Below the pieces are notes generated by a model. The model saw only the letters and a program-made list of their open reading frames with translations. It was not told the origin of the DNA and did not search any database. Of a stretch of 64,000 bases of DNA, positions 2,140 through 31,292 are shown piece by piece. Every line of letters starts with the position of its first letter. Position 1 is the stretch's first letter. A program made the translations under genes and the position numbers. The stretch spans positions 1 to 64,000 of the IMG/VR virus record IMGVR_UViG_3300027793_000052, one strand, 5' to 3'.

Positions 2140-2181
2140 TTGACATTTAAATAAACTTTTGTATATTTGTATCATATTTAT
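2140..2181 (+). promoter_or_regulatory. Composite promoter of tRNA operon 1 (TTGACA / TAnnTTTG / ATATTTAT)
   Basis: TTGACA 2140, TATATTTG 2162, ATATTTAT 2174; near-identical blocks precede tRNA operons 2 and 3. Confidence 0.7.
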
Positions 2182-2212
2182 TAAACACAAAAAATTATAT
2201 AGTAAACTCACC

Positions 2213-2302
2213 ATGACAAAGGCGACAACATACATTGTTTTAACTCACAGAGAGGAGAGAGAACGTTATCTGACTAACAGTCGGAGTGGATGTCGTATAT
2301 AG
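2213..2302 (+). CDS. Leader peptide 1 (MTKATTYIVLTHREERERYLTNSRSGCRI), putative attenuator uORF
   Basis: ATG..TAG between promoter and terminator; AGA GAG GAG AGA GAA CGT run matches downstream tRNA-Glu and tRNA-Arg. Confidence 0.7.
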   Translation: MTKATTYIVLTHREERERYLTNSRSGCRI

Positions 2303-2326
2303 TCATGTCTCTATATATCAAGATAT

Positions 2327-2358
2327 AAACCCCGATTAAGAGTCGGGGTTTTTTATTT
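2327..2358 (+). terminator. Attenuator-type intrinsic terminator, tRNA operon 1
   Basis: AAACCCCGAT/GTCGGGGTTT hairpin plus T run. Confidence 0.8.
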
Positions 2359-2409
2359 TGGCCAATAAATAAAAAATTTATACTTTTGTAAAAGTTCTTT
2401 GATAAACAA

Positions 2410-2481
2410 GCTCCCGTCGTCTAAAGGCAAGGACACATCTCTTTCACAGATGAAATACGGTTTCAAGATCCGTCGGGAGTA
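2410..2481 (+). tRNA. tRNA-Glu(UUC)
   Basis: GCTCCCG/CGGGAGT acceptor; CATCT-CTTTCAC-AGATG anticodon arm. Confidence 0.85.
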
Positions 2482-2486
2482 CAAAT

Positions 2487-2560
2487 GGTTCCGTAACTCA
2501 ATAGGATAGAGTAACTACCTTCTAAGTAGTAAGTTACAGGTTCGATCCCTGTCGGAATCA
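2487..2560 (+). tRNA. tRNA-Arg(UCU)
   Basis: GGTTCCG/CGGAATC acceptor; ACTAC-CTTCTAA-GTAGT; GGTTCGA T-loop. Confidence 0.9.
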
Positions 2561-2650
2561 CAAAAAAAGTGATAAAAAATTTATAAAGCGTATTGACAGA
2601 AGAGGTTTTTATCACTAGTATTAACAAACAAAAACGATATAGTTCTTTAA

Positions 2651-2972
2651 AATACTGATACTTGAATATTTGAAGCGGTTGGAATGATTACATCAAACAA
2701 CTATGATTCAGAAAAAGGACATTTTACCTAAGTATTGTCCAAGGTTTAATTAAAAGATGGGTATTAAGTTATCGTCCTGTTAAACTTAAAAAAACAATGG
2801 GAGTTTGTTAGCAACTCTAAAATCTAACAAGTTAGGAAGGGACTTTAAAACCCCCGAGTTTATTAGTGTCTGTAAAACCTAGTCAGGGTCACTCCTGGTC
2901 TTCCCCGAGATGGGGAACACGAAAAGTAACCATTATTCTGAAACATTCTCAGATATCAAGTTATCTAGTATT
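2651..2972 (+). ncRNA. Candidate Ro60-associated (Y-like) RNA, long form
   Basis: Ends pair (AATACT-GATA-CTTGA with TCAAG-T-TATC-T-AGTATT); carries GAAGCGGT-N8-TTACATC motif; lies upstream of Ro60. Confidence 0.5.
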
Positions 2973-2974
2973 TA

Positions 2975-3063
2975 AAAATATTCTATTGAAGCGGTGAAGA
3001 AAGTTACATCATTATTATTGAAAACGAAAAACACTTTCATCTAAAATACTCAATAGGTACTTT
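2975..3063 (+). ncRNA. Candidate Ro60-associated (Y-like) RNA, short form
   Basis: TATTCTATTGA/TCAATAGGTA closing stem, GAAAG/CTTTC inner stem, same GAAGCGGT-N8-TTACATC motif. Confidence 0.5.
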
Positions 3064-3105
3064 ATTTGTCCACGTTAACTGTAAGAGTTAATTGTGAGAC
3101 CTTAC

Positions 3106-3139
3106 AGTCCCTACGAGTAAAATTGTGGGGACTTTTTTT
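3106..3139 (+). terminator. Terminator hairpin immediately upstream of the Ro60 start
   Basis: AGTCCCTAC/GTGGGGACT plus T run; overlaps alternative hairpin CTGTAAG/CTTACAG. Confidence 0.6.
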
Positions 3140-3169
3140 ATTTTATTAAACAATATTAAATTTTAAGTT

Positions 3170-4780
3170 ATGACAAAGTTCAAATCAAAAGCAGTGGAAA
3201 ATTTTGACGGTGGTATTTCTTATACCTTAAACCCATTGGATACATTACGTATCGTGGCAGCATCATCTATCTTTGGTGAACCATCTTATTACAGAGGTTC
3301 TCACGACAAACCATCTAACTTATCTACGTTAAAGACGTATGACGTGTTAGGTTTGTACAAAGACCCAAGTGATACAACTACTGATGTTTTCACTAAGGCT
3401 ATCGACGAGGCTTTAGACTATGACTTCAAGGCAACCCTTGAGTTAGCTAAGACTCTTCGTCACGAACACTTCATGAGGTTAAACCCAGCGGTTATCTTCA
3501 TTAGAGCGTCTCAACACCCAAAGAGGGTTGAATTTAACGAAGCAAACCCAGGTTTGATGAAACAATACGGTTTGGACATTGTTGGTCGTCCTGATGACAT
3601 CACCAACCAATTTGATTACTACATGTTCTTAAACGGTTCTAAGAATGGTTTACCATCTATCGTTAAGAGGACATGGGCTGAGAAGTTGGCGTCTTTCACC
3701 AAGTACCAAATCAAGAAATATAAGTCAAAGTCATTAATTGACTTGGTTCGTATTTCTCACGCACACTCTGAAGTTATCGATGAGTTAATGAAGACTGGTG
3801 ACGTGGCTGTTTCTGAAACTGAAACAACTTGGGAATCACTTAGGTCTCAAGGTAAGACTTGGAAGGAAATTCTTAACACAATTAAGGTTTCACACATGGC
3901 TTTACTTAGGAACTTAAGGGGTATTTTCACTGAGGTGAATGATACTGAAGTGGCTAAGAAGGTTTTAACTGACCTTAAGGCAGGTGTTAAGTTTGGTAAG
4001 CAATTCCCATTCCGTTACTACACAGCTTACAAGGAAATCGATAAGGTTTCTATAAACCACAAGGGTATGATACTTGACGCTTTACAAGAGTGTCTTGACA
4101 TCTCTATCGAAAACTTCCCTAAGTTAAAGGGTAAGGTGGCTTGTTTATCAGATAACTCTGGTTCAGCTTGGGGTACAATGACCTCTGAGTATGGTACAAC
4201 CCATATTGCTGAAATTGCTAACTTATCATCTATCATCACAGCTTTATGTTCTGATGAAGGATATGTCGGTGTCTTTGGTGAAAGATTGAGTTTAAAACCT
4301 GTTTCTAAAAGAGACGGTATTATTACTCAGTTGGAAGAAACTTGTAAGAGAGGTAAGTCTCAAGGACAATCTTGTGAACACGGTATTTGGTTATTCTTAC
4401 GTGAAGCAATCGACACTAAAACTCACTATGATACTATCTTTATTTATAGTGACATGCAGGCAGGACACGGTGGTCTTTACGGTACAAGTGTAAGCCGTGG
4501 TGACGTTCACTCTAGAGGTGGAAGTTATGTAGACGTACTTAAAATGGTACAAGAATACCGTAAGAAGGTTAACCCAAAGGTTAACGTATTCACAGTCCAA
4601 GTGGCTGGATACAACAACTCTGTTGTACCTGAAAACCTTTACAGGGGTTCAGTACTTGGGGGTTGGACTGGTAAGGAAGCCTTATACGCTAGTGAGGTAA
4701 TCAAGACTTGGGATGAAATTGAGTCTAACGACAAGGTTACATCTGAGGTTGAAGTTACTGAACAAGTAGTACAATCTTAA
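3170..4780 (+). CDS. Ro60/TROVE-domain RNA-binding protein (Rsr-like) with vWA domain
   Basis: MALLRNLR, KQFPFRYYTAY, vWA DNSGS and YSDMQ motifs; 536 aa; codon usage (AAC, TTC, CGT) suggests high expression. Confidence 0.9.
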   Translation: MTKFKSKAVENFDGGISYTLNPLDTLRIVAASSIFGEPSYYRGSHDKPSNLSTLKTYDVLGLYKDPSDTTTDVFTKAIDEALDYDFKATLELAKTLRHEHFMRLNPAVIFIRASQHPKRVEFNEANPGLMKQYGLDIVGRPDDITNQFDYYMFLNGSKNGLPSIVKRTWAEKLASFTKYQIKKYKSKSLIDLVRISHAHSEVIDELMKTGDVAVSETETTWESLRSQGKTWKEILNTIKVSHMALLRNLRGIFTEVNDTEVAKKVLTDLKAGVKFGKQFPFRYYTAYKEIDKVSINHKGMILDALQECLDISIENFPKLKGKVACLSDNSGSAWGTMTSEYGTTHIAEIANLSSIITALCSDEGYVGVFGERLSLKPVSKRDGIITQLEETCKRGKSQGQSCEHGIWLFLREAIDTKTHYDTIFIYSDMQAGHGGLYGTSVSRGDVHSRGGSYVDVLKMVQEYRKKVNPKVNVFTVQVAGYNNSVVPENLYRGSVLGGWTGKEALYASEVIKTWDEIESNDKVTSEVEVTEQVVQS

Positions 4781-10289: not shown

Positions 10290-11033
10290 ATGGAAAATAG
10301 TGAGGATATACGTAAGTTTATAAACAGAGAAATTAAGGCAAATTCAATTTTTATCATCAAACAAATAGATAAAAAAGTTGCTTATGAATTTGTTAGGGTT
10401 TACCATTATTTGGGTGATGCTAAGTTCTTTGCTAAGTTTTCCTTTGGTTTATACCATAAAGAAACCGATGAATTATTAGGGATTACCGCCTTCTCAAACC
10501 CACAAGGTAATGTGGCTTTAAAAGGTTGGTTCGGATTACCTAATACAGACCAAACAGTATTAGAACTTAGTAGACTATGTGTTAAACCATACTTAAACGG
10601 AACCAACGCAACATCTTATTTATTGGGTAACAGTATAAAACTTCTTAAGAAAGAAGGGGTTAGAGCTGTTATAACATTAGCAGATGACAGTAGACACAAT
10701 GGTAGTATATACCAAGTATGTAATTTCAAATACTACGGTCTAACAGATAAAAAATCAGACTTCTTTCATTTGAACGATAAAGGCGAATGGAAAGTCAATC
10801 CAAGAGGACCCACAAAAGATAAAAACGGTGTATGGATTAATAGAACACAAAAACACAGATATGCCTACATCATAGACGAAAACCTAAAATGTCTATACGA
10901 ACAACTTTCATATCCTAAAAAAGACGATACAAAACAATATGATTGTTGTGCTGGTACTAAAATTGTAAAAGATAAACGCTTCAATATTGACTATCCGTGC
11001 CCCAAATGTACACTTTCTGTATTGGTCGAGTGA
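10290..11033 (+). CDS. Mom-like (GNAT-fold) DNA-modification protein
   Basis: HYLG, ELSRLC, LGNSIKLL, AVITLADD, HNGSIYQVCNFKYYG pattern. Confidence 0.65.
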   Translation: MENSEDIRKFINREIKANSIFIIKQIDKKVAYEFVRVYHYLGDAKFFAKFSFGLYHKETDELLGITAFSNPQGNVALKGWFGLPNTDQTVLELSRLCVKPYLNGTNATSYLLGNSIKLLKKEGVRAVITLADDSRHNGSIYQVCNFKYYGLTDKKSDFFHLNDKGEWKVNPRGPTKDKNGVWINRTQKHRYAYIIDENLKCLYEQLSYPKKDDTKQYDCCAGTKIVKDKRFNIDYPCPKCTLSVLVE

Positions 11034-11046
11034 TATTTATTAATAT

Positions 11047-11262
11047 ATGAATATCCATAAATTTATAAGAAGACATGATTTCATAAGTGGTAAACCATTT
11101 TATTCATTGTCAATGATTGAGGTTGTACCGAGAATTATATTTGATTTTGTACCAAACCGAATACCAACAAGATATTCAACAACAATGATTGATAGTAGGT
11201 ATTATTCTACGATAACATATAATAACCCAATGCCAATGGTCAACGGTACGGTACTATTTTAA
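11047..11262 (+). CDS. Hypothetical protein
   Basis: ORF track; ATATTTAT upstream. Confidence 0.45.
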   Translation: MNIHKFIRRHDFISGKPFYSLSMIEVVPRIIFDFVPNRIPTRYSTTMIDSRYYSTITYNNPMPMVNGTVLF

Positions 11263-11816
11263 TGATAACCAAATCTTTACCAATATTTTCTTTTATCAAT
11301 CCATCATTTAAATGGAGTTGTGTTCAATCTCGTATTGTAGTTGGTGAAACTAGGGCTATAAGAGCTATATGGACACCAGAACTCGCTCAAGATTTACAGG
11401 CTTTCCACAATATAGATGCTGAAGCTGAATTAACAGCTTTATTGACGGAAAATCTTAGACAAGAAATTGATACACAAATATTAAACGATTTACGTGTACG
11501 TGGTTGGGATAATTTATTTGATGTTAACAGAGGTTTAATTAATAACAGACCTGTAAATGATTTTGATAATATACAGTTACCTTTAATTAGACAAGTATCT
11601 GCAAGAACATTAGGTATGGATTTAGTAGGGGTACAATCATTGGAACTACCTGATGGGTTAATGAATTACCTAGATTATAATTATAGAACTTTACCTAATG
11701 AGGAAGGTTGGTACACAAACGATACTTGGGAATCTATATTCATTAATATGTATTTAAAACCACATAAATTTTTACCACCGAAACGTAGAAGTAGAAGGGA
11801 TATAAGAAATTTTTAA
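11262..11816 (+). CDS. Short protein built from T4 gp23-like major capsid segments
   Basis: WTPELAQDLQAFHNIDAEAELTALL..EID and LPLIRQV..DLVGVQSLELPDGLMNYLDY. Confidence 0.7.
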   Translation: MITKSLPIFSFINPSFKWSCVQSRIVVGETRAIRAIWTPELAQDLQAFHNIDAEAELTALLTENLRQEIDTQILNDLRVRGWDNLFDVNRGLINNRPVNDFDNIQLPLIRQVSARTLGMDLVGVQSLELPDGLMNYLDYNYRTLPNEEGWYTNDTWESIFINMYLKPHKFLPPKRRSRRDIRNF

Positions 11817-12531: not shown

Positions 12532-12578
12532 TTGACAAGTAATAAACTTTTACTATCTTTGTATCATATTTATTAACA
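12532..12578 (+). promoter_or_regulatory. Composite promoter of tRNA operon 2
   Basis: 47 nt identical to 17274-17320; TTGACA, TATCTTTG, ATATTTAT. Confidence 0.75.
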
Positions 12579-12595
12579 GTAACAGAATTAAACAA

Positions 12596-12688
12596 ATGAA
12601 GACTTTAACAAACATATTATTCGTGATGACACTAACGGTGTTATTTCAGTTTACACAAACTGAACTCGGGTTCTTATGTCTAAGTTAA
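12596..12688 (+). CDS. Leader peptide 2 (MKTLTNILFVMTLTVLFQFTQTELGFLCLS)
   Basis: 22 of 29 non-start codons are Q/F/M/T/V/L, the amino acids of the downstream tRNAs. Confidence 0.8.
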   Translation: MKTLTNILFVMTLTVLFQFTQTELGFLCLS

Positions 12689-12713
12689 TCATTTAATATA
12701 TTAACAAATTTAG

Positions 12714-12748
12714 AAGAACCCGAGAAAAACTCTCGGGTTTTTTTATTT
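12714..12748 (+). terminator. Attenuator terminator, tRNA operon 2
   Basis: AACCCGAGA/TCTCGGGTT plus T run; left arm also pairs perfectly (11 bp) with 12665-12675. Confidence 0.85.
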
Positions 12749-12753
12749 TATAT

Positions 12754-12827
12754 TATCCCGTCGCCTAATTGGCATGGCACTAGATTTTGACTCTAGCATA
12801 GTACAGGTTCGAACCCTGTCGGGATAA
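12754..12827 (+). tRNA. tRNA-Gln(UUG)
   Basis: CTAGA-TTTTGAC-TCTAG; TATCCCG/CGGGATA. Confidence 0.88.
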
Positions 12828-12857
12828 CCGAAGAAGTTATTTGACATATTATATTTT

Positions 12858-12930
12858 GTGGAAGTTACCAAGTTGGTCAAGGTGTTGGTCTGAAAAACCA
12901 ATTATATGAGTTCGATTCTCATCTTCCACA
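12858..12930 (+). tRNA. tRNA-Phe(GAA)
   Basis: TTGGT-CTGAAAA-ACCAA; GTGGAAG/CTTCCAC. Confidence 0.88.
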
Positions 12931-13061
12931 CAACAAGCCGTAGGTATGAATAAGTATATATATATATATATAATATTATTTTAATAACTTATTTAATCAT
13001 TAATTAAAATAATCATCTAAAGTTCGATAATTTTTATCGATATATAATGATATTTATTACT

Positions 13062-13895
13062 ATGAAATGGTATAAAAAAGATATTGAAACATTGATTGAA
13101 TTAATTCGTCAAGGTAACACCTATGATGAAATAGGTGTTATAATGAAAAGAAGTAGATCTTCTATTAAAGCTAAATTATTAAAATTGGGTGAGACATATA
13201 GAAAGTATTCTGAAAACAATTATTATGAAAAGGTTAATTGTAAAAATTGTGGTATAGAATTTAAATCTTTAATGTCTAATAAACAAAAATTTTGTAACCA
13301 TACATGTGCTGCAAGTTATAATAATGTAATTAGAGGTAAAAGAAGTCAAGAAACAAAAAATAAAATAAGTAAATCATTAAAAAGTAAAAAAAAGGAGAAA
13401 TATGATTTAAATCCTAAAAAATGTATGAAATGTGGTGAACATATACCATATAGTAAATGGTGTAATTATAGAAAAAATTGTGACGAATGTAACATTATTA
13501 TTCGTAAAAATATGGGTAGGATTTTAGGTCAAAAAACCTCACAAACCAAAATAAAAAGATCGAAAGACGAGATAAATTTATATGAGTTATGTAAGATGAG
13601 TTTTAACGATGTTGAACATAATAAAATAATAAGTTCTGGATGGGATGCTGATATTGTTATAAATGATTATAAAATACTTATACTATGGAATGGTCCTTGG
13701 CATTATAAACAGTTACCATTAAAAAACCATAGTTTAAATCAAGTACAAACTAGAGATAAAATAAAACAAAAATTGTTTGAAAGTTTAGGTTGGAGAGTTA
13801 TAATATTTGAAGATAGATATTACACACCATATACAGCTTTTGATTATTTAAAAAATATAATTCGGGATATATCTCCCCACTCTCATAAGGTGTAG
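13062..13895 (+). mobile_element. Putative free-standing homing endonuclease (Cys-rich DNA-binding repeats plus Vsr/PD-(D/E)xK-like C-terminus)
   Basis: CKNC...FCNHTC, WDADIV..ILILWNGPWHY, RDKIK..GWRV; inserted inside a tRNA cluster. Confidence 0.6.
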
Positions 13896-13941
13896 AAAGA
13901 GTAATTGGCAACATGTGAGTTCAACTCTCACTATCCCGACA
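13862..13941 (+). ncRNA. Atypical tRNA-like RNA with CAU anticodon loop and no normal D-arm
   Basis: 8-bp TCGGGATA/TATCCCGA stem, CTCATAA loop, GTGAG-TTCAACT-CTCAC T-arm; only ~7 nt between acceptor and anticodon arm. Confidence 0.55.
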
Positions 13942-13985
13942 AAATAATGGTTCGATCTGTTCAAATCAGATATACGGTACTATAT

Positions 13986-14059
13986 TCCGGTGATACTCTG
14001 AAGGTAAGGGTGCTCGCCTTGTAAGCGAGATTTAGTCGGTTCGATCCCGACCACCGGAT
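13986..14059 (+). tRNA. tRNA-Thr(UGU)
   Basis: CTCGC-CTTGTAA-GCGAG; TCCGGTG/CACCGGA. Confidence 0.88.
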
Positions 14060-14064
14060 CAAAA

Positions 14065-14135
14065 GCCCTGATGACGTAATGGTAGCGTACTAATTTTACA
14101 TGTTAGCAGCAAAGGTTCAATTCCTTTTCAGGGCA
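14065..14135 (+). tRNA. tRNA-Val(UAC)
   Basis: CTAAT-TTTACAT-GTTAG; GCCCTGA/TCAGGGC. Confidence 0.8.
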
Positions 14136-14141
14136 CAAAAA

Positions 14142-14218
14142 GCCTTCGTGACGTAATTGGTAACCGTGTTAGTTTTAGAAACTAAATTTTGTGAGTTCAA
14201 ATCTCACCGAAGGCACCA
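14142..14218 (+). tRNA. tRNA-Leu(UAG), short variable loop, CCA encoded
   Basis: TTAGT-TTTAGAA-ACTAA; GCCTTCG/CGAAGGC. Confidence 0.85.
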
Positions 14219-14266
14219 AAAATTTTGATAATAAATAAACTTTTACTATATTTGTATCAACAAAAT

Positions 14267-14340
14267 GTTCCCATGGCGAAATTGGTAAACGCAACGAGTT
14301 TAAGCCTCGTATGTTCTCGGTTCAAATCCGGGTGGGAATA
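14267..14340 (+). tRNA. tRNA-Leu(UAA), short variable loop
   Basis: ACGAG-TTTAAGC-CTCGT; has its own TATATTTG promoter just upstream. Confidence 0.82.
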
Positions 14341-14556
14341 CAAAACATTGACGATATGGCGTGTAGGTGTAACTCGTTATAACACCGAGGGGAACATATG
14401 GTATACGAGAAACCATTGTGGTGTGTCTGAAGGGTCAATGTTGATATGGGGTGAGAATCTTAGTTGGCCACTAAGAAAATATGGAAGGGTGTCGCGTTAC
14501 CCAATCGGCTCAAATCCGATCCACTCCACTTTGGGTTATTTTTTGACCAAAAAATA

Positions 14557-14830
14557 ATGAGTAAGAGATACTCAAGAGTTGGGCTACTGGTCTATATCGC
14601 GTGGCAGTCTAGATGAGTGATGAGACTTTAAACTTCACCCCTTGGGTTAAAGGAGAAACATCGAACTCCTCCATTGTACGGTTGACAGGTTTTTATGTGG
14701 TAAGACACTAATGTAAACTCATAGAATTACCGATTAGAGACAAAGGGCTCTTCTGCAGGTGTTATGAGATGGTTCTCGAAACAGTCAGAGAAACCCGTTA
14801 AAATCTAATCCTCAAAGTAATCTCATTTGG
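14557..14830 (+). ncRNA. Unidentified structured RNA
   Basis: Non-coding and GC-enriched; nested stems AATGAG/CTCATT, GATTAGA/TCTAATC, GGG-CTCT/AGAG-CCC. Confidence 0.4.
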
Positions 14831-14839
14831 GGTAAAAAT

Positions 14840-14941
14840 AGTCAGGTGGCGTAATTGGTAACCGCTATAGGGTTGAGGCGTGCTAACTACCTATATAAAT
14901 TGTTTTTAAACAATGCAGGTTCGAGTCCTGTCCTGACTACA
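14840..14941 (+). ncRNA. tRNA-like RNA, AGTCAGG family copy 1 (aberrant anticodon arm)
   Basis: AGTCAGG/CCTGACT acceptor, CAGGTTCGAGTCCTG T-arm, no 7-nt anticodon loop. Confidence 0.65.
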
Positions 14942-15057
14942 AAAATAAAGACATATGGAATATATATTAGGATTTTTAATTGGTATAAGTATTTTTATTA
15001 TTTTTCATAAACCTATTATTAGAGCTTTAGAAAAATTAATCGACATTATCCAAGAAT

Positions 15058-15160
15058 AGTCAGGTGGTGAAATTGGTAGCCACAGCATATAAGACCATGG
15101 GCGTTGTGTTGAAACCTACTGGGGATTAGATTTACAGGTTCGAGTCCTGTCCTGACTACA
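15058..15160 (+). ncRNA. tRNA-like RNA, AGTCAGG family copy 2
   Basis: Same acceptor and T-arm, unrelated central region. Confidence 0.65.
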
Positions 15161-15384
15161 CGAGTCGAGTTGTGTTCGACTAATGTGCTCCCGCATGATG
15201 GAAGTGGTGTCACACCCACAGGGACCTGAGCCGATTACTTGAATCTAAGTCGGTTGGTTGGTGTACCAGTAACAGGAGGAAGTTAACACACAAGTCCTAA
15301 CCCCTCACGTAAGTGGGTTGCCGCTGAAGCCTCGAGAAGCTATTCGGTATTGGGGACAGTCAGAAATGATTGGGCGAAAATTAT

Positions 15385-15461
15385 AGTCAGGTGGTAGAAT
15401 TGTGATTACACCTTGGGACGAATGTCTAGGAGATACAGGTTCGAATCCTGTCCTGACTACA
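15385..15461 (+). ncRNA. tRNA-like RNA, AGTCAGG family copy 3
   Basis: Same acceptor and T-arm; central hairpin with 4-nt loop. Confidence 0.6.
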
Positions 15462-15975: not shown

Positions 15976-16163
15976 TGGAAGGAAAAGAATTTAAATTTGT
16001 TGAGGGTATAGATTATTACCTAGATAAAGGTAGTATTGTACTTACTGAAGAATATTTAACACGTAGAAAAAAATGCTGTGGCTCTGGTTGCCGACATTGT
16101 CCATTTTGGCCTAGACATACTAAAGGTAATACAGAGTTAAGAGAAAAACCTAAAGAAAATTAA
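15975..16163 (+). CDS. Small Cys-rich protein
   Basis: CCGSGCRHCPF motif. Confidence 0.6.
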   Translation: MEGKEFKFVEGIDYYLDKGSIVLTEEYLTRRKKCCGSGCRHCPFWPRHTKGNTELREKPKEN

Positions 16164-16213
16164 AAAATACTTGACAGGAGATAAAAATTAATATATAATT
16201 GTATCATTAATAT

Positions 16214-16285
16214 CGCGATGAGGGTGTTGGTTCCCCACCGGTCTCATAAACCAGGTCCACGGCCGTTCGATTCGGCCCGTCGCCA
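16214..16285 (+). tRNA. tRNA-Met(CAU), possibly initiator type
   Basis: CTCATAA loop; C1:C72 mismatch in acceptor stem; anticodon stem lacks the usual three G-C pairs. Confidence 0.75.
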
Positions 16286-16382
16286 CTAAGTCCCCTATAG
16301 TATTATAGGGGATTTTTTTTAACATTAAAGACAACTTGACAAATTTAACAATCATAACGATATTTATATAAAAAGATATACC

Positions 16383-17261: not shown

Positions 17262-17273
17262 TTTAAAAAATAG

Positions 17274-17320
17274 TTGACAAGTAATAAACTTTTACTATCT
17301 TTGTATCATATTTATTAACA
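17274..17320 (+). promoter_or_regulatory. Composite promoter of tRNA operon 3
   Basis: 47 nt identical to 12532-12578. Confidence 0.75.
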
Positions 17321-17338
17321 AACAAAACAATTAAAGAA

Positions 17339-17434
17339 ATGAAAAATTGGCATAACATATCGAGTATACATAGTAATCGAATTAATAGTTCGGTGTACAC
17401 ATGGTGTGTTTTGTCCAATCAAGATAATACTTAA
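17339..17434 (+). CDS. Leader peptide 3 (MKNWHNISSIHSNRINSSVYTWCVLSNQDNT)
   Basis: Codons 3-18 are 16 consecutive N/W/H/I/S/R, the amino acids of the downstream tRNAs. Confidence 0.82.
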   Translation: MKNWHNISSIHSNRINSSVYTWCVLSNQDNT

Positions 17435-17459
17435 TGGGAATTAAGTTTTTTGTACAAGG

Positions 17460-17496
17460 AAAACCCACCACATGAAAATGTCGGTGGGTTTTTTGT
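17460..17496 (+). terminator. Attenuator terminator, tRNA operon 3
   Basis: AAAACCCACC/GGTGGGTTTT plus T run; competing strand at 17401-17412. Confidence 0.8.
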
Positions 17497-17522
17497 TATT
17501 TGACATATTGGTAAATTAAAAT

Positions 17523-17611
17523 GGAGAGTTAAGCAGATGCATTGGAGCGTCGACCAGCTTTGAAACCTGGGTCTCGTTAAGTCGGGTGGGGGTCGGGTCC
17601 TCAGCTCTCCG
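17523..17611 (+). tRNA. tRNA-Ser(UGA)
   Basis: TTTGAAA loop, long variable arm, GGAGAGT/GCTCTCC. Confidence 0.75.
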
Positions 17612-17617
17612 CAAAAT

Positions 17618-17706
17618 GGTGTTAGAGTCGGATATTGGTTAGCCGAGCTTGTCTGTGAAACAAGTGTTCTTTAGTGAACGTGCGGGTTCAATCCCCGTCT
17701 ATCACC
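17618..17706 (+). tRNA. tRNA-His(GUG)
   Basis: CTTGT-CTGTGAA-ACAAG; G-1:C73 pair; enlarged variable region. Confidence 0.8.
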
Positions 17707-17713
17707 CAAATAC

Positions 17714-17788
17714 GGGTCTGTAGTACTAATTGGATAAAACTTTCGGCTGTTAACCGAGATGATGTGAGTTCGAGTCTCACTGGACCCG
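17714..17788 (+). tRNA. tRNA-Asn(GUU) copy 1
   Basis: TTCGG-CTGTTAA-CCGAG. Confidence 0.85.
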
Positions 17789-17795
17789 CTGATTT

Positions 17796-17871
17796 GGACT
17801 GTAAGCTGACAAGGGGTAGCTGTGGCCTGTTAAGCCAAGGGTGGTGGGTTCGATTCCCACACAGTCCGCCA
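17796..17871 (+). tRNA. tRNA-Asn(GUU) copy 2, CCA encoded
   Basis: TGGC-CTGTTAA-GCCA; GGACTGT/ACAGTCC. Confidence 0.85.
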
Positions 17872-17874
17872 AAC

Positions 17875-17946
17875 GGGGGTATAGCTCAGTGGTAGAGCAG
17901 AGAGCTGTTAACTCTAAGGTCGTAGGTTCAATCCCTTCTACCCCCG
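17875..17946 (+). tRNA. tRNA-Asn(GUU) copy 3
   Basis: AGAG-CTGTTAA-CTCT; canonical D-arm. Confidence 0.9.
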
Positions 17947-17953
17947 CAAATAT

Positions 17954-18026
17954 AGTATCGTGTCTGAACGGTTTAGGAACTATCCTGATAAGATAGGAAA
18001 AGTGGGTTCAACTCCCACCGATACTA
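17954..18026 (+). tRNA. tRNA-Ile(GAU)
   Basis: CTATC-CTGATAA-GATAG. Confidence 0.85.
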
Positions 18027-18033
18027 CTAAAAT

Positions 18034-18107
18034 ACATCTGAGACCATATAGGAATTGGTACTGGCTTCCAAACCCAGTTGTTGCAGGTTCGAATCCTGTC
18101 AGATGTG
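18034..18107 (+). tRNA. tRNA-Trp(CCA)
   Basis: TTCCAAA loop; ACATCTG/CAGATGT. Confidence 0.8.
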
Positions 18108-18112
18108 CAAAA

Positions 18113-18202
18113 GGAAGATAGGTAAATATTGGTTTGTTACAGCATCCTGCTAAGATGTCCCGGGTAATACCGGTGAGGGTTCAATTCCCTTGTCTTCCGC
18201 CA
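18113..18202 (+). tRNA. tRNA-Ser(GCU), CCA encoded
   Basis: GCATC-CTGCTAA-GATGT; long variable arm. Confidence 0.88.
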
Positions 18203-18205
18203 AAT

Positions 18206-18293
18206 GGAGAGTTAAGGAAGGGAGTGGTTCCCTCGCTTGTTTGGAAAACAAGAACCCATTAAGTTGGGCACAGTTCGACTCTGTATCTCTCCG
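18206..18293 (+). tRNA. tRNA-Ser(GGA)
   Basis: CTTGT-TTGGAAA-ACAAG; long variable arm. Confidence 0.85.
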
Positions 18294-18303
18294 CTAATAA
18301 CAT

Positions 18304-18375
18304 GGGCGTGTCATATAAGGGTTATTATGCGAAGCTTATACCTTCGTCAAGGTGGCTCAACTCCACCCACGCCTA
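18304..18375 (+). tRNA. tRNA-Ile(UAU)
   Basis: CGAAG-CTTATAC-CTTCG; GGGCGTG/CACGCCT. Confidence 0.78.
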
Positions 18376-18380
18376 CAAAT

Positions 18381-18455
18381 GGTTCCATAGTGTAATTGGA
18401 TAACACGCAAAGCTACGAACTTTGAGACTTGAGGGTTCAAATCCTTCTGGAACTA
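18381..18455 (+). tRNA. tRNA-Arg(ACG)
   Basis: CAAAG-CTACGAA-CTTTG. Confidence 0.88.
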
Positions 18456-18460
18456 CTAAC

Positions 18461-18487
18461 AAACCCACCCCATGGTGGGTTTTTTTA
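18461..18487 (+). terminator. Terminator ending tRNA operon 3
   Basis: AAACCCACC/GGTGGGTTT plus T run. Confidence 0.8.
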
Positions 18488-18522
18488 TTTACATATGCCC
18501 CTAGTTTAAGTATAATTTATAT

Positions 18523-19041
18523 ATGATTAAAAATAGTATTCCTGAACATAGAATGGGTGTACATGTTTCTGTACCGATAGAAGATATTAGACAGAACATG
18601 GATTTTGGTAATATAATCCAACCTAGATGGTTATTAACAATACCACACAATCATGGTTTATATCAGTATTTAGTAAAAACAGATGGTCCATCAGTGGTAA
18701 CAGTTGGTAATATTGATTTTGGTGTACCAAGATTGGAATGGCAACCATTAAAATTAACCGTTGTAAGATGTGATGATTATGACACCACAAATACTATAAC
18801 TTATACCAGTGGTACAATTACATTAGGTGATAGTCCTTTAGATGTAATCAGAAATTGGATGATGAGTTATGAAAAGAAAAATATTAGGTTGGAAAAAATA
18901 AACCATAATGGTTTATGGCATGAAAGGTTTGATATAAGAGGTTCATTTATAACAGAAATGAATCATGAGGTAATTATGGATAGGGAGATCAGTCAAATGG
19001 AGATAACAATAAATTTTGACCATTTACAGTATATATTATGA
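18523..19041 (+). CDS. Divergent T4 gp19-like tail tube paralog
   Basis: EWQPLKLT..VIRNWM..KKNIRLEKINHNG..ERFDIRGSFITE..EITINFD resembles the gp19-type pattern. Confidence 0.45.
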   Translation: MIKNSIPEHRMGVHVSVPIEDIRQNMDFGNIIQPRWLLTIPHNHGLYQYLVKTDGPSVVTVGNIDFGVPRLEWQPLKLTVVRCDDYDTTNTITYTSGTITLGDSPLDVIRNWMMSYEKKNIRLEKINHNGLWHERFDIRGSFITEMNHEVIMDREISQMEITINFDHLQYIL

Positions 19042-20081: not shown

Positions 20082-20541
20082 TTATCTTAATGTTGACATC
20101 AATATTCTACCTGATTTAACAGAAGAAGAAAGGGTTAAATTAGGTGGTAATAATATTGATTGGCAAACAAAACATTTTGAATGTGAAATGACCCATGTTT
20201 ATATTGTTGAGGATACAGAAAATAAATTTAGACATTCATTCTTAAAAAACAGAACACCTTATAAATTACAAATAAAAAGATTTGATTGGGAAGAGGTACC
20301 AAAAGAAGAAAGACCGTACCCAAATGCTGATGAAAATTCTTTTGAACACCTTCTAGGTTCTTTTAGGGAAATTAATGTAAGAGTTGAAGATTTAGATTAT
20401 ACAGGAACTTTTACTTTCTATACTTATATAAAACCAGAAGATGAGGGGATTGGTGATGTTAAAAAGTTAAAATGGGTTGAGTTTATTTGTGAAGTTGAAA
20501 ATGGTAAAATAATTTCAATAAAGCGGTTGACAGATGAATAA
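20068..20541 (+). CDS. Hypothetical phage protein
   Basis: ORF track. Confidence 0.55.
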   Translation: MGMFDYLNVDINILPDLTEEERVKLGGNNIDWQTKHFECEMTHVYIVEDTENKFRHSFLKNRTPYKLQIKRFDWEEVPKEERPYPNADENSFEHLLGSFREINVRVEDLDYTGTFTFYTYIKPEDEGIGDVKKLKWVEFICEVENGKIISIKRLTDE

Positions 20542-20760
20542 TAATCCTTATATTTGTATAAGAAATAAAAATACATAACATAAATTTAACATAAGCGTTG
20601 ACAAATAAATAAAACTTTATTAATTTTGTCCATATTTATTTATAGAAGTTGTGGTTCTGATGGGTTTCAGGAACCACCCCAAAAAAGACAGATACAGAAC
20701 GGGGACTGTTTACAACGAAAACCCCACAAAAAAAACTATAAACAAATTAAAACTAAAAAA

Positions 20761-20868
20761 ATGAGAAAGAATTACACATATCAACCGAGTACACCGAAAG
20801 CAGGGAAAGTAGCCGATAAAGGCTGTGATACCTTGAATGGTTGTGGTATGTACAATTCTGTCTCATAA
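20761..20868 (+). CDS. Leader peptide 4 (MRKNYTYQPSTPKAGKVADKGCDTLNGCGMYNSVS)
   Basis: 11 of 12 codons in PKAGKVADKGCD are from the Y/P/D/G/A/C/K set of downstream tRNAs. Confidence 0.78.
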   Translation: MRKNYTYQPSTPKAGKVADKGCDTLNGCGMYNSVS

Positions 20869-20892
20869 GAATATATAGAGAAGAGTTTAAAT

Positions 20893-20930
20893 AACCCCCA
20901 CAACCGATAAAAAAGTTGTGGGGGTTTTTG
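20893..20930 (+). terminator. Attenuator terminator, tRNA operon 4
   Basis: AACCCCCACAAC/GTTGTGGGGGTT plus T run; competing GGTTGTGG at 20839-20846. Confidence 0.85.
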
Positions 20931-20943
20931 TTTATAGTTATAC

Positions 20944-21025
20944 CCGTAAGTTGAACAGGTGGTGAGTTCCGTTGACTGTAGATCAACCGTTTTAAACTGT
21001 GGGGGTTCGATTCCCTCCTTACGGA
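20944..21025 (+). tRNA. tRNA-Tyr(GUA)
   Basis: GTTGA-CTGTAGA-TCAAC; variable arm. Confidence 0.85.
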
Positions 21026-21045
21026 CAAAAACGTTCATTGAAAAT

Positions 21046-21169
21046 AAAAAGAATAGAAGCGGTGGTATTGGTTACATCGATAATGGATATCAATTTGACA
21101 GCAAATCAAACGTTGTGGGTTCGAGTCCCATGATAAAAAACACCGATATTTTTATTCTCTGTTCTTTTT
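21046..21169 (+). ncRNA. tRNA-Cys-like body closed by a Y-like stem
   Basis: GAAGCGGT-N8-TTACATC motif, D-like hairpin, TTTGA-CAGCAAA-TCAAA, GTGGG-TTCGAGT-CCCAT; no normal acceptor stem. Confidence 0.55.
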
Positions 21170-21175
21170 AAATAT

Positions 21176-21254
21176 ATGGGGTTGGAGGAGTCAGGTTTTC
21201 CTCGCTTGGTTTGGGACCAAGAGACTTGCGTGGGTTCAAATCCCACACCCCATA
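21176..21254 (+). tRNA. tRNA-Pro(UGG)
   Basis: CTTGG-TTTGGGA-CCAAG. Confidence 0.82.
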
Positions 21255-21260
21255 CAAAAC

Positions 21261-21338
21261 GGATACGGCGCATAACGGCTGGTGTACCTGACTGTCTATC
21301 AGGTTTTAAGAGGGTTCGACTCCCTTCGTATCCGCCAA
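21261..21338 (+). tRNA. tRNA-Asp(GUC), CCA encoded
   Basis: CCTGA-CTGTCTA-TCAGG. Confidence 0.88.
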
Positions 21339-21340
21339 TG

Positions 21341-21410
21341 CGGGATTAGCATAAAGTTAATGTACTAGTCTTCCAAACTAGTGAAGTCGGATAGTTACCG
21401 GCATCCCGCT
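21341..21410 (+). tRNA. tRNA-Gly(UCC)
   Basis: CTAGT-CTTCCAA-ACTAG; GCGGGAT/ATCCCGC, U73; non-canonical T-loop. Confidence 0.78.
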
Positions 21411-21420
21411 CTAAAATTAT

Positions 21421-21495
21421 GGGCTACATCCCGAAGGCAGGGCACTTGATTTGCACTCAAGTGAAAACGGTAGGGTTCGATTCCCTCGTGGTCCA
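21421..21495 (+). tRNA. tRNA-Ala(UGC)
   Basis: CTTGA-TTTGCAC-TCAAG; G3-U70. Confidence 0.85.
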
Positions 21496-21509
21496 CAAAT
21501 ATAATAAAA

Positions 21510-21600
21510 GGGTCTGTGGTGTGAGTGGTTTAAACCACCTGTCTGCAAAACAGGGATGACAATTAATTTTGTTACGTCAGTTCGAATCTGACCAGACCCT
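21510..21600 (+). tRNA. tRNA-Cys(GCA) with long variable arm
   Basis: CCTGT-CTGCAAA-ACAGG; U73. Confidence 0.82.
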
Positions 21601-21612
21601 CTAAAAAATAAA

Positions 21613-21687
21613 GACCTCGTAACTTAGTTGGTTTAAAGTGCTAATCTTTTAAATTAGAAATCGTGAGTTCGAATCTCACCGGGGTCA
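21613..21687 (+). tRNA. tRNA-Lys(UUU)
   Basis: CTAAT-CTTTTAA-ATTAG. Confidence 0.88.
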
Positions 21688-21688
21688 C

Positions 21689-30868: not shown

Positions 30869-31259
30869 GGGGGTGACTTGGAATTGATTGGCTACATTAG
30901 TTATTGTAAAAGCATGTCGAGACTTGTTTGTAGGCTCGTTAAACCAACAATCAAAATTTTAAATGGCGACATTTTCGCAGACGCTACTGTAGGTCACTTT
31001 GTGACTGAAGGTGCAGAGGTTGTAGCCTAATTAGATTAGGGTACACAACGGGGTTGGATTACCTAGGAACAGAAGTCCAAAAAAGGGTGTTACCACTACC
31101 ACAAAAGGGTAAAGTCAAACATGGAATGTGTCAACTAAGTCCATGGGAGAACTAAAAGATGAAGTTGTATATTTTGGGTGGTTAGAAAACCACATCCTAA
31201 ACATGTAGAAGACTTTAATTCATTAGAACAAGACGGCGGTTCGACCCCGCTCACCTCCA
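30869..31259 (+). ncRNA. ssrA: tmRNA
   Basis: GGGGGTG/CACCTCC-A acceptor with G3-U70, GCATGTCGAG after helix 2, GACGGCGGTTCGACCCCGC T-arm; tag ORF 30965-31030. Confidence 0.92.
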
Positions 31260-31292
31260 CTTTAGAAATTTATTAACCTAAAAATCGAAAAA

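What the first reader, a model, noticed from the sequence alone, without database searches (positions are those of the whole stretch)
12596..14340. Attenuator 2: perfect 11-bp antiterminator, in an operon interrupted by an endonuclease gene
Seen: CTCGGGTTCTT (12665-12675, inside the uORF) is the exact complement of AAGAACCCGAG (12714-12724). The leader also covers Met, Thr, Val and Leu, whose tRNAs lie beyond an ~850-bp endonuclease ORF. Inference: the operon predates the insertion, and the endonuclease may now be co-induced by tRNA starvation.
Basis: partly seen in the sequence, partly recalled or inferred. Interest (0 to 1): 0.7.

Follow-up and report, generated by a model that had tools for sequence, protein, structure and literature searches.

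The report
Leader-peptide attenuator controlling phage tRNA genes
A giant freshwater phage appears to switch on its own tRNA genes with a short "test" reading frame built from the codons those tRNAs read; this classic bacterial control device has not, as far as I could find, been described for tRNA genes, and the same design recurs in many related phages.

Summary
12665-12675 is the exact reverse complement of 12714-12724, and the pairing extends to about 18 bp (12664-12687 with 12707-12725). It competes with a strong intrinsic terminator (12711-12745 plus a U-tract) that ends 5 nt before tRNA-Gln.

The 30-codon leader ORF (12596-12688) is made mostly of codons read by the tRNAs downstream: Gln, Phe, Thr, Val, Leu.

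This is not a one-off. All four main tRNA operons of this 318-kb phage have the same promoter, leader ORF, antiterminator and terminator layout, and each leader matches its own operon. Related metagenomic phages carry at least 25 distinct leaders whose amino-acid and isoacceptor content tracks the local tRNA set (own operon is the best match in 11 of 11 types; permutation P<5e-6; the signal is frame-specific).

The 282-aa ORF has a Vsr-like homing-endonuclease fold (best match I-Bth0305I). It sits in a roughly 985-bp insertion that split a tRNA-Met gene. Relatives keep Phe-Met-Thr intact with no ORF.

No promoter box or terminator separates the ORF from the leader, so co-regulation is plausible but unproven. 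tRNA-Leu(UAA) has its own promoter copy.

Nine literature searches found no prior description.

The parts
12532..12561 (+). Operon-2 promoter: TTGACA (12532-12537) and a Bacteroidetes-type -7 box TATCTTTG (12554-12561).
   Evidence: The same 23-nt core is repeated at 14237 and 17286, with similar copies at 2140-2169 and 20596-20628. It is conserved in relatives. The promoter consensus itself is from my own knowledge of Bacteroidetes promoters.
12596..12688 (+). Leader ORF of 30 codons. The sensor run, codons 4-21 (12605-12658), is made of Leu, Thr, Phe, Val, Met and Gln codons, apart from two (AAC, ATA) at codons 6-7.
   Evidence: Searches give 19/29 to 22/29 codons cognate to the operon's tRNAs (binomial P=8e-7). 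Among relatives the substitutions are synonymous or stay within the sensor set, for example Thr to Leu in L041.
12664..12687 (+). Antiterminator 5' arm (segment 2).
12707..12725 (+). Shared arm (segment 3). It pairs either with segment 2, forming the antiterminator, or with segment 4, forming the terminator.
12731..12749 (+). Terminator 3' arm and U-tract (segment 4). The whole hairpin is 12711-12745.
   Evidence: 15 pairs, 5-nt loop, T-run; fold z-score -5.2.
12754..12931 (+). tRNA-Gln(UUG) at 12754-12829 and tRNA-Phe(GAA) at 12858-12931.
12936..12946 (+). 5' stub of a disrupted tRNA-Met gene, followed by a (TA)n tract at 12955-12970.
   Evidence: It matches the first 11 nt of the intact tRNA-Met of L030 and L041.
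13047..13895 (+). Homing-endonuclease-like ORF of 282 aa: N-terminal HTH, two Cys4 zinc modules, and a C-terminal Vsr/RAP-like nuclease domain.
   Evidence: Pfam RAP match at E=5e-4, below the cut-off. PHROG matches to an HTH and to an 'HNH endonuclease' DNA-binding region. The AF2 model has pLDDT 80; its best PDB matches are I-Bth0305I (3r3p, TM 0.66 over the target) and then Vsr. Homologues at 40-57% identity sit in tRNA arrays of unrelated phages, often next to tRNA-Met.
13862..13941 (+). tRNA-like hairpin with a CUCAUAA loop that overlaps the 3' end of the ORF. It is not an accepted tRNA.
   Evidence: Read. Neither ARAGORN nor the Rfam tRNA model calls it. The only match is a weak antisense Plastid-ycf2 hit.
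13931..13981 (+). 3' remnant of the disrupted tRNA-Met gene: anticodon arm with a mutated loop, T arm and 3' acceptor strand.
   Evidence: Local alignment to the L030 tRNA-Met, positions 23-76.
13986..14218 (+). tRNA-Thr(UGU), tRNA-Val(UAC) and tRNA-Leu(UAG).
14225..14341 (+). A leaderless second copy of the promoter (14225-14254), followed by tRNA-Leu(UAA) at 14267-14341.
   Evidence: In L030, Leu(UAA) follows directly in the operon with no such promoter.
2140..2561 (+). Sister attenuator 1: promoter, leader 2213-2302 with the run AGA GAG GAG AGA GAA, terminator 2322-2358, then tRNA-Glu(UUC) and tRNA-Arg(UCU).
17270..18456 (+). Sister attenuator 3: promoter, leader 17339-17434 (rich in Trp, His, Asn, Ile, Ser and Arg), terminator 17461-17491, then tRNAs Ser, His, Asn x3, Ile, Trp, Ser, Ser, Ile, Arg.
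20527..21688 (+). Sister attenuator 4: promoters, leader 20761-20868 (rich in Tyr, Pro, Lys, Ala, Gly, Asp and Cys), terminator 20893-20927, then tRNAs Tyr, Pro, Asp, Gly, Ala, Cys, Lys.

Best explanation
This is a ribosome-mediated transcription attenuator of the trp/his/ilv mechanical type, but the genes it controls are tRNA genes.

Proposed sequence of events:
1. Transcription starts at the 12532-12561 promoter.
2. A ribosome translates the 30-codon leader while RNA polymerase transcribes 12700-12750.
3. If codons 4-21 are decoded quickly, the ribosome reaches codon 21 or the stop and covers segment 2 (12664-12687). Most of these codons are TTA, ACA, TTC/TTT, GTG, CTA, CAG/CAA and ATG, the codons read by the operon's own tRNAs.
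4. Segment 3 (12707-12725) then pairs with segment 4, and transcription stops 5 nt before tRNA-Gln.
5. If any of those codons is decoded slowly because the matching charged tRNA is scarce, the ribosome stalls upstream. Segment 2 pairs with segment 3 in an 18-bp antiterminator.
6. The polymerase then reads on through tRNA-Gln, tRNA-Phe, the endonuclease insertion, tRNA-Thr, tRNA-Val and tRNA-Leu(UAG).
7. The new tRNAs speed up leader translation, which closes a negative-feedback loop.

What is shown: the sequence parts, their geometry, the codon-to-tRNA match, conservation and co-variation across phages, and RNA coverage across the terminators.

What is inferred: the stalling, the switch itself, and the physiological trigger. 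The trigger could be codon-usage mismatch with the host, loss of host tRNA during infection, or tRNA-cleaving host defences.
For: Structure in the window:
- Exact 11-bp pairing, extended to 18 bp, that competes with the terminator.
- Masked folding places the permissive window at codons 5-20, which coincides with the sensor run.
- The terminator ends 5 nt before tRNA-Gln, leaving no room for another promoter.

Repetition within the genome:
- All four main tRNA operons carry the same layout, and each leader fits its own operon best of the 24 possible assignments.

Evidence across phages:
- 42 distinct candidate leaders; 25 have z>=2, in 32 loci.
- Among 11 independent leader types, the own operon is the best-scoring amino-acid set in 11 of 11. 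In 200,000 permutations none reached the observed sum.
- 61% of in-frame codons are cognate, against 31% and 29% in the shifted frames, P about 1e-15.
- For Arg, Leu, Ser and Ile, 112 of 138 leader codons fit the isoacceptors actually present. Examples are AGA with Arg-UCU, CGN with Arg-ACG, TTA with Leu-UAA, CTN with Leu-UAG and ATA with Ile-UAU.
- In 18 of 20 cases a segment at the 3' end of the ORF is complementary to the terminator's 5' arm beyond shuffles. The arm sequences differ between types, which amounts to three-way co-variation.
- The L082 variant lacks tRNA-Pro, and its leader lacks Pro codons.

RNA evidence:
- Metatranscriptome contigs span leader, terminator and tRNAs at 3-10 times the depth of flanking protein genes.
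Against: - There is no experiment, and no 3'-end mapping at the terminator.
- The RNA evidence is assembled contigs only. It shows co-transcription at best, not regulation.
- The full-length transcript's minimum-energy fold always keeps the terminator, so the switch has to be kinetic, as in classic attenuators.
- Without a ribosome, the truncated transcript also forms the antiterminator. Untranslated transcripts might therefore read through rather than terminate.
- Leader 1 is weak on codon count alone (5/28, P=0.1), although its five cognate codons form one uninterrupted run.
- The leader 4 antiterminator is weak (P=0.2).
- A possible secondary -7 box lies between the terminator and tRNA-Glu in operon 1 (2381).
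- Transcription-translation coupling in the unknown, probably Bacteroidota, host is assumed.
Confidence: 0.82

Rival explanations
1. The attenuator hardware is the same, but the signal is amino-acid starvation (uncharged tRNA) rather than a shortage of tRNA molecules. On this view the phage tRNA operons are simply tied to the host's amino-acid status.
For: Every known leader-peptide attenuator reads charged-tRNA availability, and that depends on amino acids too (general knowledge; PMC1183508 abstract). The sequence cannot separate the two signals.
Against: Making more tRNA does not relieve amino-acid starvation, so the response would be useless. The leaders also follow the isoacceptor, not just the amino acid: 112 of 138 split-box codons fit, for example AGA versus CGN and TTA versus CTN according to which anticodon the operon encodes.
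Confidence: 0.12
2. The terminator is relieved by a trans-acting factor, such as a phage antiterminator protein or a T-box-like direct tRNA contact, and the short ORF is incidental.
For: Phages often use protein antiterminators (general knowledge). No data here show that the ORF is translated.
Against: The codon match is frame-specific, 61% against about 30% in the other frames. The ORF is kept open in every relative, with synonymous or within-set substitutions. No T-box or other Rfam leader family reaches its threshold. The alternative pairing always sits at the stop codon.
Confidence: 0.04
3. It is coincidence. 12596-12688 encodes a small hydrophobic membrane peptide with its own terminator, its Leu/Phe/Val/Thr-rich make-up only happens to resemble the tRNA list, and the tRNAs are made by constant leak-through.
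For: Taken alone, this leader peptide looks like a transmembrane helix, and hydrophobic residues dominate the match.
Against: The other leaders are not hydrophobic (Arg/Glu-rich; Trp/His/Asn/Ser-rich; Tyr/Pro/Lys/Gly-rich), yet each matches its own operon. There is 11-of-11 specificity across types, and the antiterminator is conserved at the stop codon.
Confidence: 0.02

Closest known systems
Leader-peptide (ribosome-mediated) transcription attenuators of amino-acid operons and of pheST: trp, his, leu, thr, ilvGMEDA, pheA.
   Same: Both have a promoter-proximal short ORF with regulatory codons, an intrinsic terminator, and an antiterminator that shares the terminator's 5' arm and is blocked by a ribosome at the stop codon. 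Multivalent leaders also exist (thr: Thr and Ile; ilv: Leu, Val, Ile). This is from my own knowledge; the general definition is in PMC1183508.
   Different: Here the controlled genes are tRNA genes, so the product acts back on the sensor directly. The leaders sample 2 to about 15 different amino acids, at isoacceptor resolution. The sensor content is re-tailored from operon to operon and from phage to phage. The setting is a phage, with Bacteroidetes-type promoters and no Shine-Dalgarno sequence. No Rfam leader family matches: Trp_leader scores 27 bits against a cut-off of 41, and at a different leader.
T-box riboswitches.
   Same: The regulatory logic is the same: the supply side of translation is switched on by a terminator/antiterminator choice when a particular tRNA is not available in charged form.
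   Different: A T-box binds uncharged tRNA directly through a specifier loop and needs no ORF or ribosome. It controls synthetase, transporter or biosynthesis genes, not tRNA genes. No T-box match was found in the window.
I-Bth0305I / Vsr-like homing endonucleases, and free-standing homing endonuclease genes in phage tRNA clusters such as T4 segB (the latter from memory).
   Same: The C-terminal domain of the ORF 13047-13895 superposes best on the I-Bth0305I catalytic domain and then on Vsr. Homologues are scattered through tRNA arrays of unrelated phages. The gene lies in the sense orientation inside a tRNA operon.
   Different: The DNA-binding N-terminus differs (an HTH plus two Cys4 modules). 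The gene is not inside an intron: no group I intron match was found. Here it split a tRNA-Met gene. Cleavage activity and target site are unknown.

Membership tests
Ribosome-mediated (leader-peptide) transcription attenuator | A short ORF lies close behind the promoter, with codons cognate to the regulated pathway. | tested here: met
   ORF 12596-12688. Between 19/29 and 22/29 codons are cognate to the operon's tRNAs. The signal is frame-specific.
Ribosome-mediated (leader-peptide) transcription attenuator | An intrinsic terminator lies between the leader ORF and the first regulated gene. | tested here: met
   Hairpin 12711-12745 plus a U-tract, ending 5 nt before tRNA-Gln.
Ribosome-mediated (leader-peptide) transcription attenuator | A mutually exclusive antiterminator uses the terminator's 5' arm, and its other arm is covered by a ribosome at the stop codon. 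| tested here: met
   12664-12687 pairs with 12707-12725 at dG -23.3. The pairing forms only with the A site on codons 5-20. The same geometry holds in 18 of 20 leaders.
Ribosome-mediated (leader-peptide) transcription attenuator | The regulated genes are amino-acid biosynthesis or aminoacyl-tRNA synthetase genes. | tested here: not met
   The downstream genes are tRNAs plus an inserted endonuclease gene. This is the point of novelty.
Ribosome-mediated (leader-peptide) transcription attenuator | Read-through responds to the availability of the cognate charged tRNA. | not testable with these tools
   Only metatranscriptome contigs that span the terminators are available.
T-box riboswitch | Stem I with a specifier loop and the conserved T-box sequence (Rfam model). 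| tested here: not met
   No T-box match at the gathering score or at E<=1.
Vsr-like (I-Bth0305I-type) homing endonuclease | A Vsr/PD-(D/E)xK-like catalytic fold. | tested here: met
   Foldseek best match 3r3p (probability 1.0, TM 0.66 over the target), and 1vsr at rank 5. Pfam RAP match at E=5e-4, below the cut-off.
Vsr-like (I-Bth0305I-type) homing endonuclease | Catalytic residues are conserved and site-specific cleavage occurs. | tested here: inconclusive
   D200, D202, N215, H219, H228 and D237 are invariant among 27 homologues. They were not mapped onto the published active site, and no activity data exist.
Vsr-like (I-Bth0305I-type) homing endonuclease | Mobility: presence or absence at a conserved site among relatives. 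| tested here: met
   The ORF is absent between Phe and Thr in L030, L045 and L041, where tRNA-Met is intact. In the window it is present and flanked by the two ends of that tRNA. Homologues occur in unrelated phages' tRNA arrays.

The most novel reading that the evidence does not exclude
This would be a previously undescribed regulatory class: tRNA operons that regulate themselves through programmable multi-codon leader peptides. Each leader is an evolvable checklist of the codons served by the tRNAs behind it, and it acts as an OR gate that turns the operon on when any one of them runs short. The design is widespread in a large clade of uncultured freshwater jumbo phages, most of them with Bacteroidetes-type promoters, and may extend to other lineages whose leaders are preceded by Shine-Dalgarno-like sequences (L100, L105, L108). 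It could let a phage sense and repair tRNA loss, including loss caused by host anticodon nucleases. It also drives the mobile endonuclease genes that have settled inside these operons.
Probability: 0.6. Interest if true: 0.92.

Novelty: new variant of a known kind. Interest (0 to 1): 0.88.

Why it matters
Why phages carry tRNA genes, and how they time and dose them, is an old open question. The usual answers are codon compensation or escape from tRNA-targeting defences (for example PMC10264068).

A leader that reads exactly the codons served by the downstream tRNAs would mean the phage measures decoding capacity codon by codon and makes tRNA on demand. That makes the question directly testable with reporters.

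It also extends leader-peptide attenuation to a new class of target genes, and to leaders that monitor up to about 15 amino acids at isoacceptor resolution.

Comparing leaders with their operons gives a natural data set on how such sensors are rewired when tRNA genes are gained or lost.

Finally, it suggests that homing-endonuclease genes lodged in these operons are expressed under the same signal.

Tried and rejected
- Close relatives by short peptide or DNA patterns. These found only a 100% identical IMG/VR contig, which adds nothing. Relatives were reached instead through the neighbouring Ro60/TROVE gene.
- The genome search. It could not draw relatives for a virus record, nor open the ENA/JGI metagenome records.
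- Unrelated phages carrying homologues of the endonuclease (L007-L027). A simple scan found no comparable attenuators.
- Cultured phages. Bacillus phage G (Ro60 52% identical) and Flavobacterium phage immuto (capsid 41% identical) have no such leaders. No culturable model was found.
- Equilibrium folding of the full leader. It always keeps the terminator, so it cannot show the switch. Folding the transcript cut before segment 4 was used instead.
- Reading the ORF as intron-encoded. Rejected because no group I or II intron match was found, and the flanks are too short and AT-rich for an intron core.
- Reading 13862-13941 as a working tRNA-Met. Rejected because ARAGORN and the Rfam tRNA model do not call it.
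- Aligning the tRNA-Met genes next to homologous endonucleases in other phages. This gave nothing useful.
- Metatranscriptome depth as a measure of attenuation. Rejected because contigs carry only one mean depth each and break at the repeated promoter.
- Literature. Nine full-text searches found no description of leader-peptide control of tRNA genes. Older subscription papers are not in the library, and I could not open a 1985 paper on the E. coli tRNA-Phe gene pheV. An old single-gene precedent therefore cannot be excluded.
Full report
CONTEXT. The window is the first 64 kb of a 317,983-bp IMG/VR virus record with 30% G+C, estimated 96% complete. All of its tRNA genes lie in the first 22 kb. 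The window also holds a tmRNA, a Ro60/TROVE protein and a T4-type capsid gene elsewhere in the genome. No cultured phage is close. Promoter-like sequences carry the TTG...TAnnTTTG pattern that I know from Bacteroidetes (own knowledge), and the start codons are preceded by A-rich tracts rather than Shine-Dalgarno sequences. The host is therefore probably a freshwater member of Bacteroidota. That is an inference.

THE OBSERVATION. CTCGGGTTCTT at 12665-12675 is the exact reverse complement of AAGAACCCGAG at 12714-12724. The first copy lies in codons 24-27 of a 30-codon ORF, 12596-12688. The second copy is the 5' arm of a textbook intrinsic terminator, 12711-12745, with 15 pairs, a 5-nt loop and a U-tract. 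The region's fold z-score is -5.2. A perfect inverted repeat of 11 or more anywhere in the leader arises in 1.3% of dinucleotide shuffles. None of 500 shuffles reaches the duplex energy against the terminator arm. The terminator ends 5 nt before tRNA-Gln.

GEOMETRY. I folded the transcript as it exists just before the terminator's 3' arm is made, and masked a 30-nt ribosome footprint. The antiterminator forms when the A site is on codons 5-19, partly at codon 20. It is lost from codon 21 to the stop. The run of codons cognate to the operon's tRNAs occupies codons 4-21. Sensor and switch are therefore in register, as in classic attenuators. The full-length transcript prefers the terminator at equilibrium, so the choice must be kinetic. 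One difference from the trp model is that naked RNA, with no ribosome, also forms the antiterminator in the truncated transcript.

CODON MATCH IN THIS GENOME. The leader uses Leu (TTA x4, CTA x2, CTC), Thr (x6), Phe (x4), Val (x2), Gln (x2) and Met (x1). The operon encodes Gln-UUG, Phe-GAA, Thr-UGU, Val-UAC and Leu-UAG, and further on Leu-UAA. That makes 19 of 29 codons cognate with two-way wobble (binomial P=8e-7 against the phage's own codon usage), or 22 of 29 if U34 reads whole family boxes.

The same layout stands in front of the three other main operons:
- Leader 2213-2302 carries the run AGA GAG GAG AGA GAA, ahead of tRNA-Glu(UUC) and tRNA-Arg(UCU).
- Leader 17339-17434 is rich in Trp, His, Asn, Ile, Ser and Arg, ahead of Ser, His, Asn x3, Ile, Trp, Ser, Ser, Ile and Arg(ACG). 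It has 20 of 30 cognate codons (P=1e-5).
- Leader 20761-20868 is rich in Tyr, Pro, Lys, Ala, Gly, Asp and Cys, ahead of Tyr, Pro, Asp, Gly, Ala, Cys and Lys.

Of the 24 ways to pair the four leaders with the four operons, the true pairing scores highest. Two units have no leader. One is tRNA-Met at 16214-16286, which has its own promoter and terminator. The other is the unit that starts with tRNA-Leu(UAA).

RELATIVES. Peptide and DNA patterns found only an identical contig. The neighbouring Ro60 gene has hundreds of homologues at 52-95% identity. Through it I fetched 89 syntenic loci. A simple scan for terminator, then short ORF, then tRNAs found 42 distinct candidate leaders. Of these, 25 have z>=2, in 32 loci.

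The leaders fall into types whose content follows the local tRNA set:
- Arg/Glu leaders stand before Glu plus Arg-UCU.
- Thr/Leu/Phe/Val/Gln/Met leaders stand before Gln-Phe-Met-Thr-Val-Leu.
- Leu/Pro/Ser/Ile/Arg leaders stand before Ser-Arg-Pro-Ile-Met-Leu.
- Leu/Asp/Glu leaders stand before Glu-Asp-Met-Leu.
- One leader samples about 15 amino acids before a 16-tRNA operon.
- Four further types occur in L074, L089, L105 and L108.

The statistics across these types are as follows:
- For 11 independent types, each leader scores best on its own operon (11 of 11). No permutation out of 200,000 reaches the observed total.
- The signal is frame-specific: 61% cognate codons in frame, against 31% and 29% in the shifted frames, P about 1e-15.
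- The signal reaches isoacceptor level. Of 138 Arg, Leu, Ser and Ile codons, 112 fit the anticodons actually present. The mismatches cluster in the 3' arm region.
- In 18 of 20 leaders, a segment at the stop codon is complementary to the terminator's 5' arm beyond shuffles. The arm sequences differ between types. This is three-way co-variation.
- L082 lacks tRNA-Pro and tRNA-Ser, and its leader lacks Pro codons.

Most leaders have the TAnnTTTG box about 35 nt upstream. L100, L105 and L108 instead have Shine-Dalgarno-like sequences, so the design may not be limited to one host phylum.

THE ENDONUCLEASE AND THE SPLIT tRNA. The ORF 13047-13895 has an N-terminal HTH and two Cys4 modules. Its C-terminal domain gives a confident model (pLDDT 80) whose best PDB match is the catalytic domain of the homing endonuclease I-Bth0305I, followed by RAP-domain proteins and Vsr. 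Homologues at 40-57% identity lie in tRNA arrays of unrelated phages, often touching a tRNA-Met(CAU) gene.

L030, L045 and L041 have a leader 87% identical in DNA, followed by Gln-Phe-Met-Thr-Val with no ORF. In the window, the first 11 nt of that tRNA-Met remain at 12936-12946. Its last 50 nt or so remain at 13931-13981, with the anticodon loop mutated. A roughly 985-bp insertion has therefore split the gene, and the operon predates the insertion.

No TAnnTTTG box lies on the + strand between 12562 and 14247, and no terminator lies on the + strand there. The ORF and tRNAs Thr, Val and Leu(UAG) therefore most likely depend on the leader promoter. Sense-strand endonuclease-like ORFs sit inside attenuator-led tRNA operons in L030 (HNH, GIY-YIG) and in L082, so this arrangement recurs. 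tRNA-Leu(UAA) has gained its own leaderless promoter copy at 14225-14254. In L030 it is simply part of the operon.

RNA EVIDENCE. Four freshwater metatranscriptomes hold the phage.
- Contigs span 12549-13991, which covers the leader, terminator, Gln, Phe and the whole ORF.
- Contigs span 17291-18414 and about 20579-21753/22036, which cover leader, terminator and tRNAs.
- Their depth is 3-10 times that of the neighbouring protein genes.

This argues for RNA rather than contaminating DNA, and for transcripts that pass the terminators. Contigs carry one mean depth each and break at the repeated promoter, so they say nothing about regulation.

WHAT IT IS AND HOW IT COMPARES. Mechanically it meets every structural criterion of a ribosome-mediated attenuator. 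It differs in what it controls, which is tRNA genes, so the product feeds back on the sensor. It also differs in the breadth and isoacceptor resolution of the sensor, and in how freely the sensor is re-tailored between operons. It is not a T-box or any Rfam leader family. Nine full-text searches found no description of such control of tRNA genes. The library lacks many older papers, so an isolated precedent cannot be excluded.

VERDICT. It is one instance of a family-wide and apparently undescribed use of attenuation. The main open points are experimental proof of the switch, the physiological trigger, and whether the endonuclease is really co-induced.

Noticed in passing
window 2560-3140 and 3170-4780; also 21050-21135: A Ro60/TROVE protein gene (phrog_850, Pfam TROVE in homologues) lies next to about 550 nt of non-coding sequence. 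That sequence carries repeated GAAGCGGT...GTTACATC modules and a terminator, and may encode Y-RNA-like partners. A third copy of the module sits between tRNA-Tyr and tRNA-Pro. No Rfam family reaches its threshold.
   Followed up: partly
window 14840-14940, 15058-15158, 15385-15460: Three paralogous tRNA-like genes share the same acceptor and T arms but have unusual or enlarged anticodon regions; ARAGORN proposes a 4-base anticodon for the third. Metatranscriptome contigs join 14860 to 15435 through 103 other letters at depth up to 415, so related variants are highly expressed somewhere.
   Followed up: no
window 14341-14830 and 15160-15380: These stretches are richer in G+C than the rest of the genome, look structured, and have no convincing ORF and no Rfam match. 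RNA depth is very high, with 60-nt contigs at 14629-14688 reaching depth 402 in run X6. They may be unknown non-coding RNAs transcribed from the leaderless promoter at 14225-14254.
   Followed up: no
window 2381-2409; L036:8820-8850; L038:14150-14170 and 17500-17530: A conserved motif, (G)TTCTTTGA(A/T)A, lies between the attenuator's terminator and the first tRNA in several operons. In operon 1 it comes with a TAnnTTTG box at 2381. It could be a weak secondary promoter that gives basal expression, or a processing signal.
   Followed up: no
window 16163-16320: tRNA-Met(CAU) at 16214-16286 has its own promoter and terminator and no leader. The 1:72 position looks mismatched by eye, which suggests an initiator tRNA. 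That would fit the idea that an initiator cannot be sensed by an elongation-based leader.
   Followed up: no
window 30869-31262: A phage-encoded tmRNA (Rfam 82 bits). Together with the Ro60 protein and a near-complete tRNA set, it shows a large investment in translation upkeep.
   Followed up: no
window 11262-11816 (also 10290-11033): A 184-aa ORF matches only parts of the T4 Gp23 capsid family, while the real 589-aa capsid gene lies at about 142.3-144.1 kb. The fragment is conserved in relatives, next to a Mom-like gene.
   Followed up: partly
window 17444-17488 (run X12): One metatranscriptome contig skips 43 nt that contain most of the leader-3 terminator hairpin. Nine letters are shared at the joint, so this looks like reverse transcriptase jumping across the stem. 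It would imply an RNA that spanned the terminator.
   Followed up: no
leaders at 12596, 17339; L037:4028; L038:14022 and 17376; L058:17120: Leaders of different sensor types share their promoter, 5' UTR and first six or seven codons, often ending in ...Asn-Ile. This suggests one ancestral cassette that was duplicated and then had its sensor codons rewritten for each operon.
   Followed up: partly
L030:8123-8536, 17290-17742, 18121-18762; L082:12774-13424: Several other endonuclease-like ORFs (HNH/NUMOD4, GIY-YIG, PD-(D/E)xK-like) lie in the sense orientation inside attenuator-led tRNA operons of relatives. These operons appear to be hot spots for mobile endonuclease genes.
   Followed up: partly
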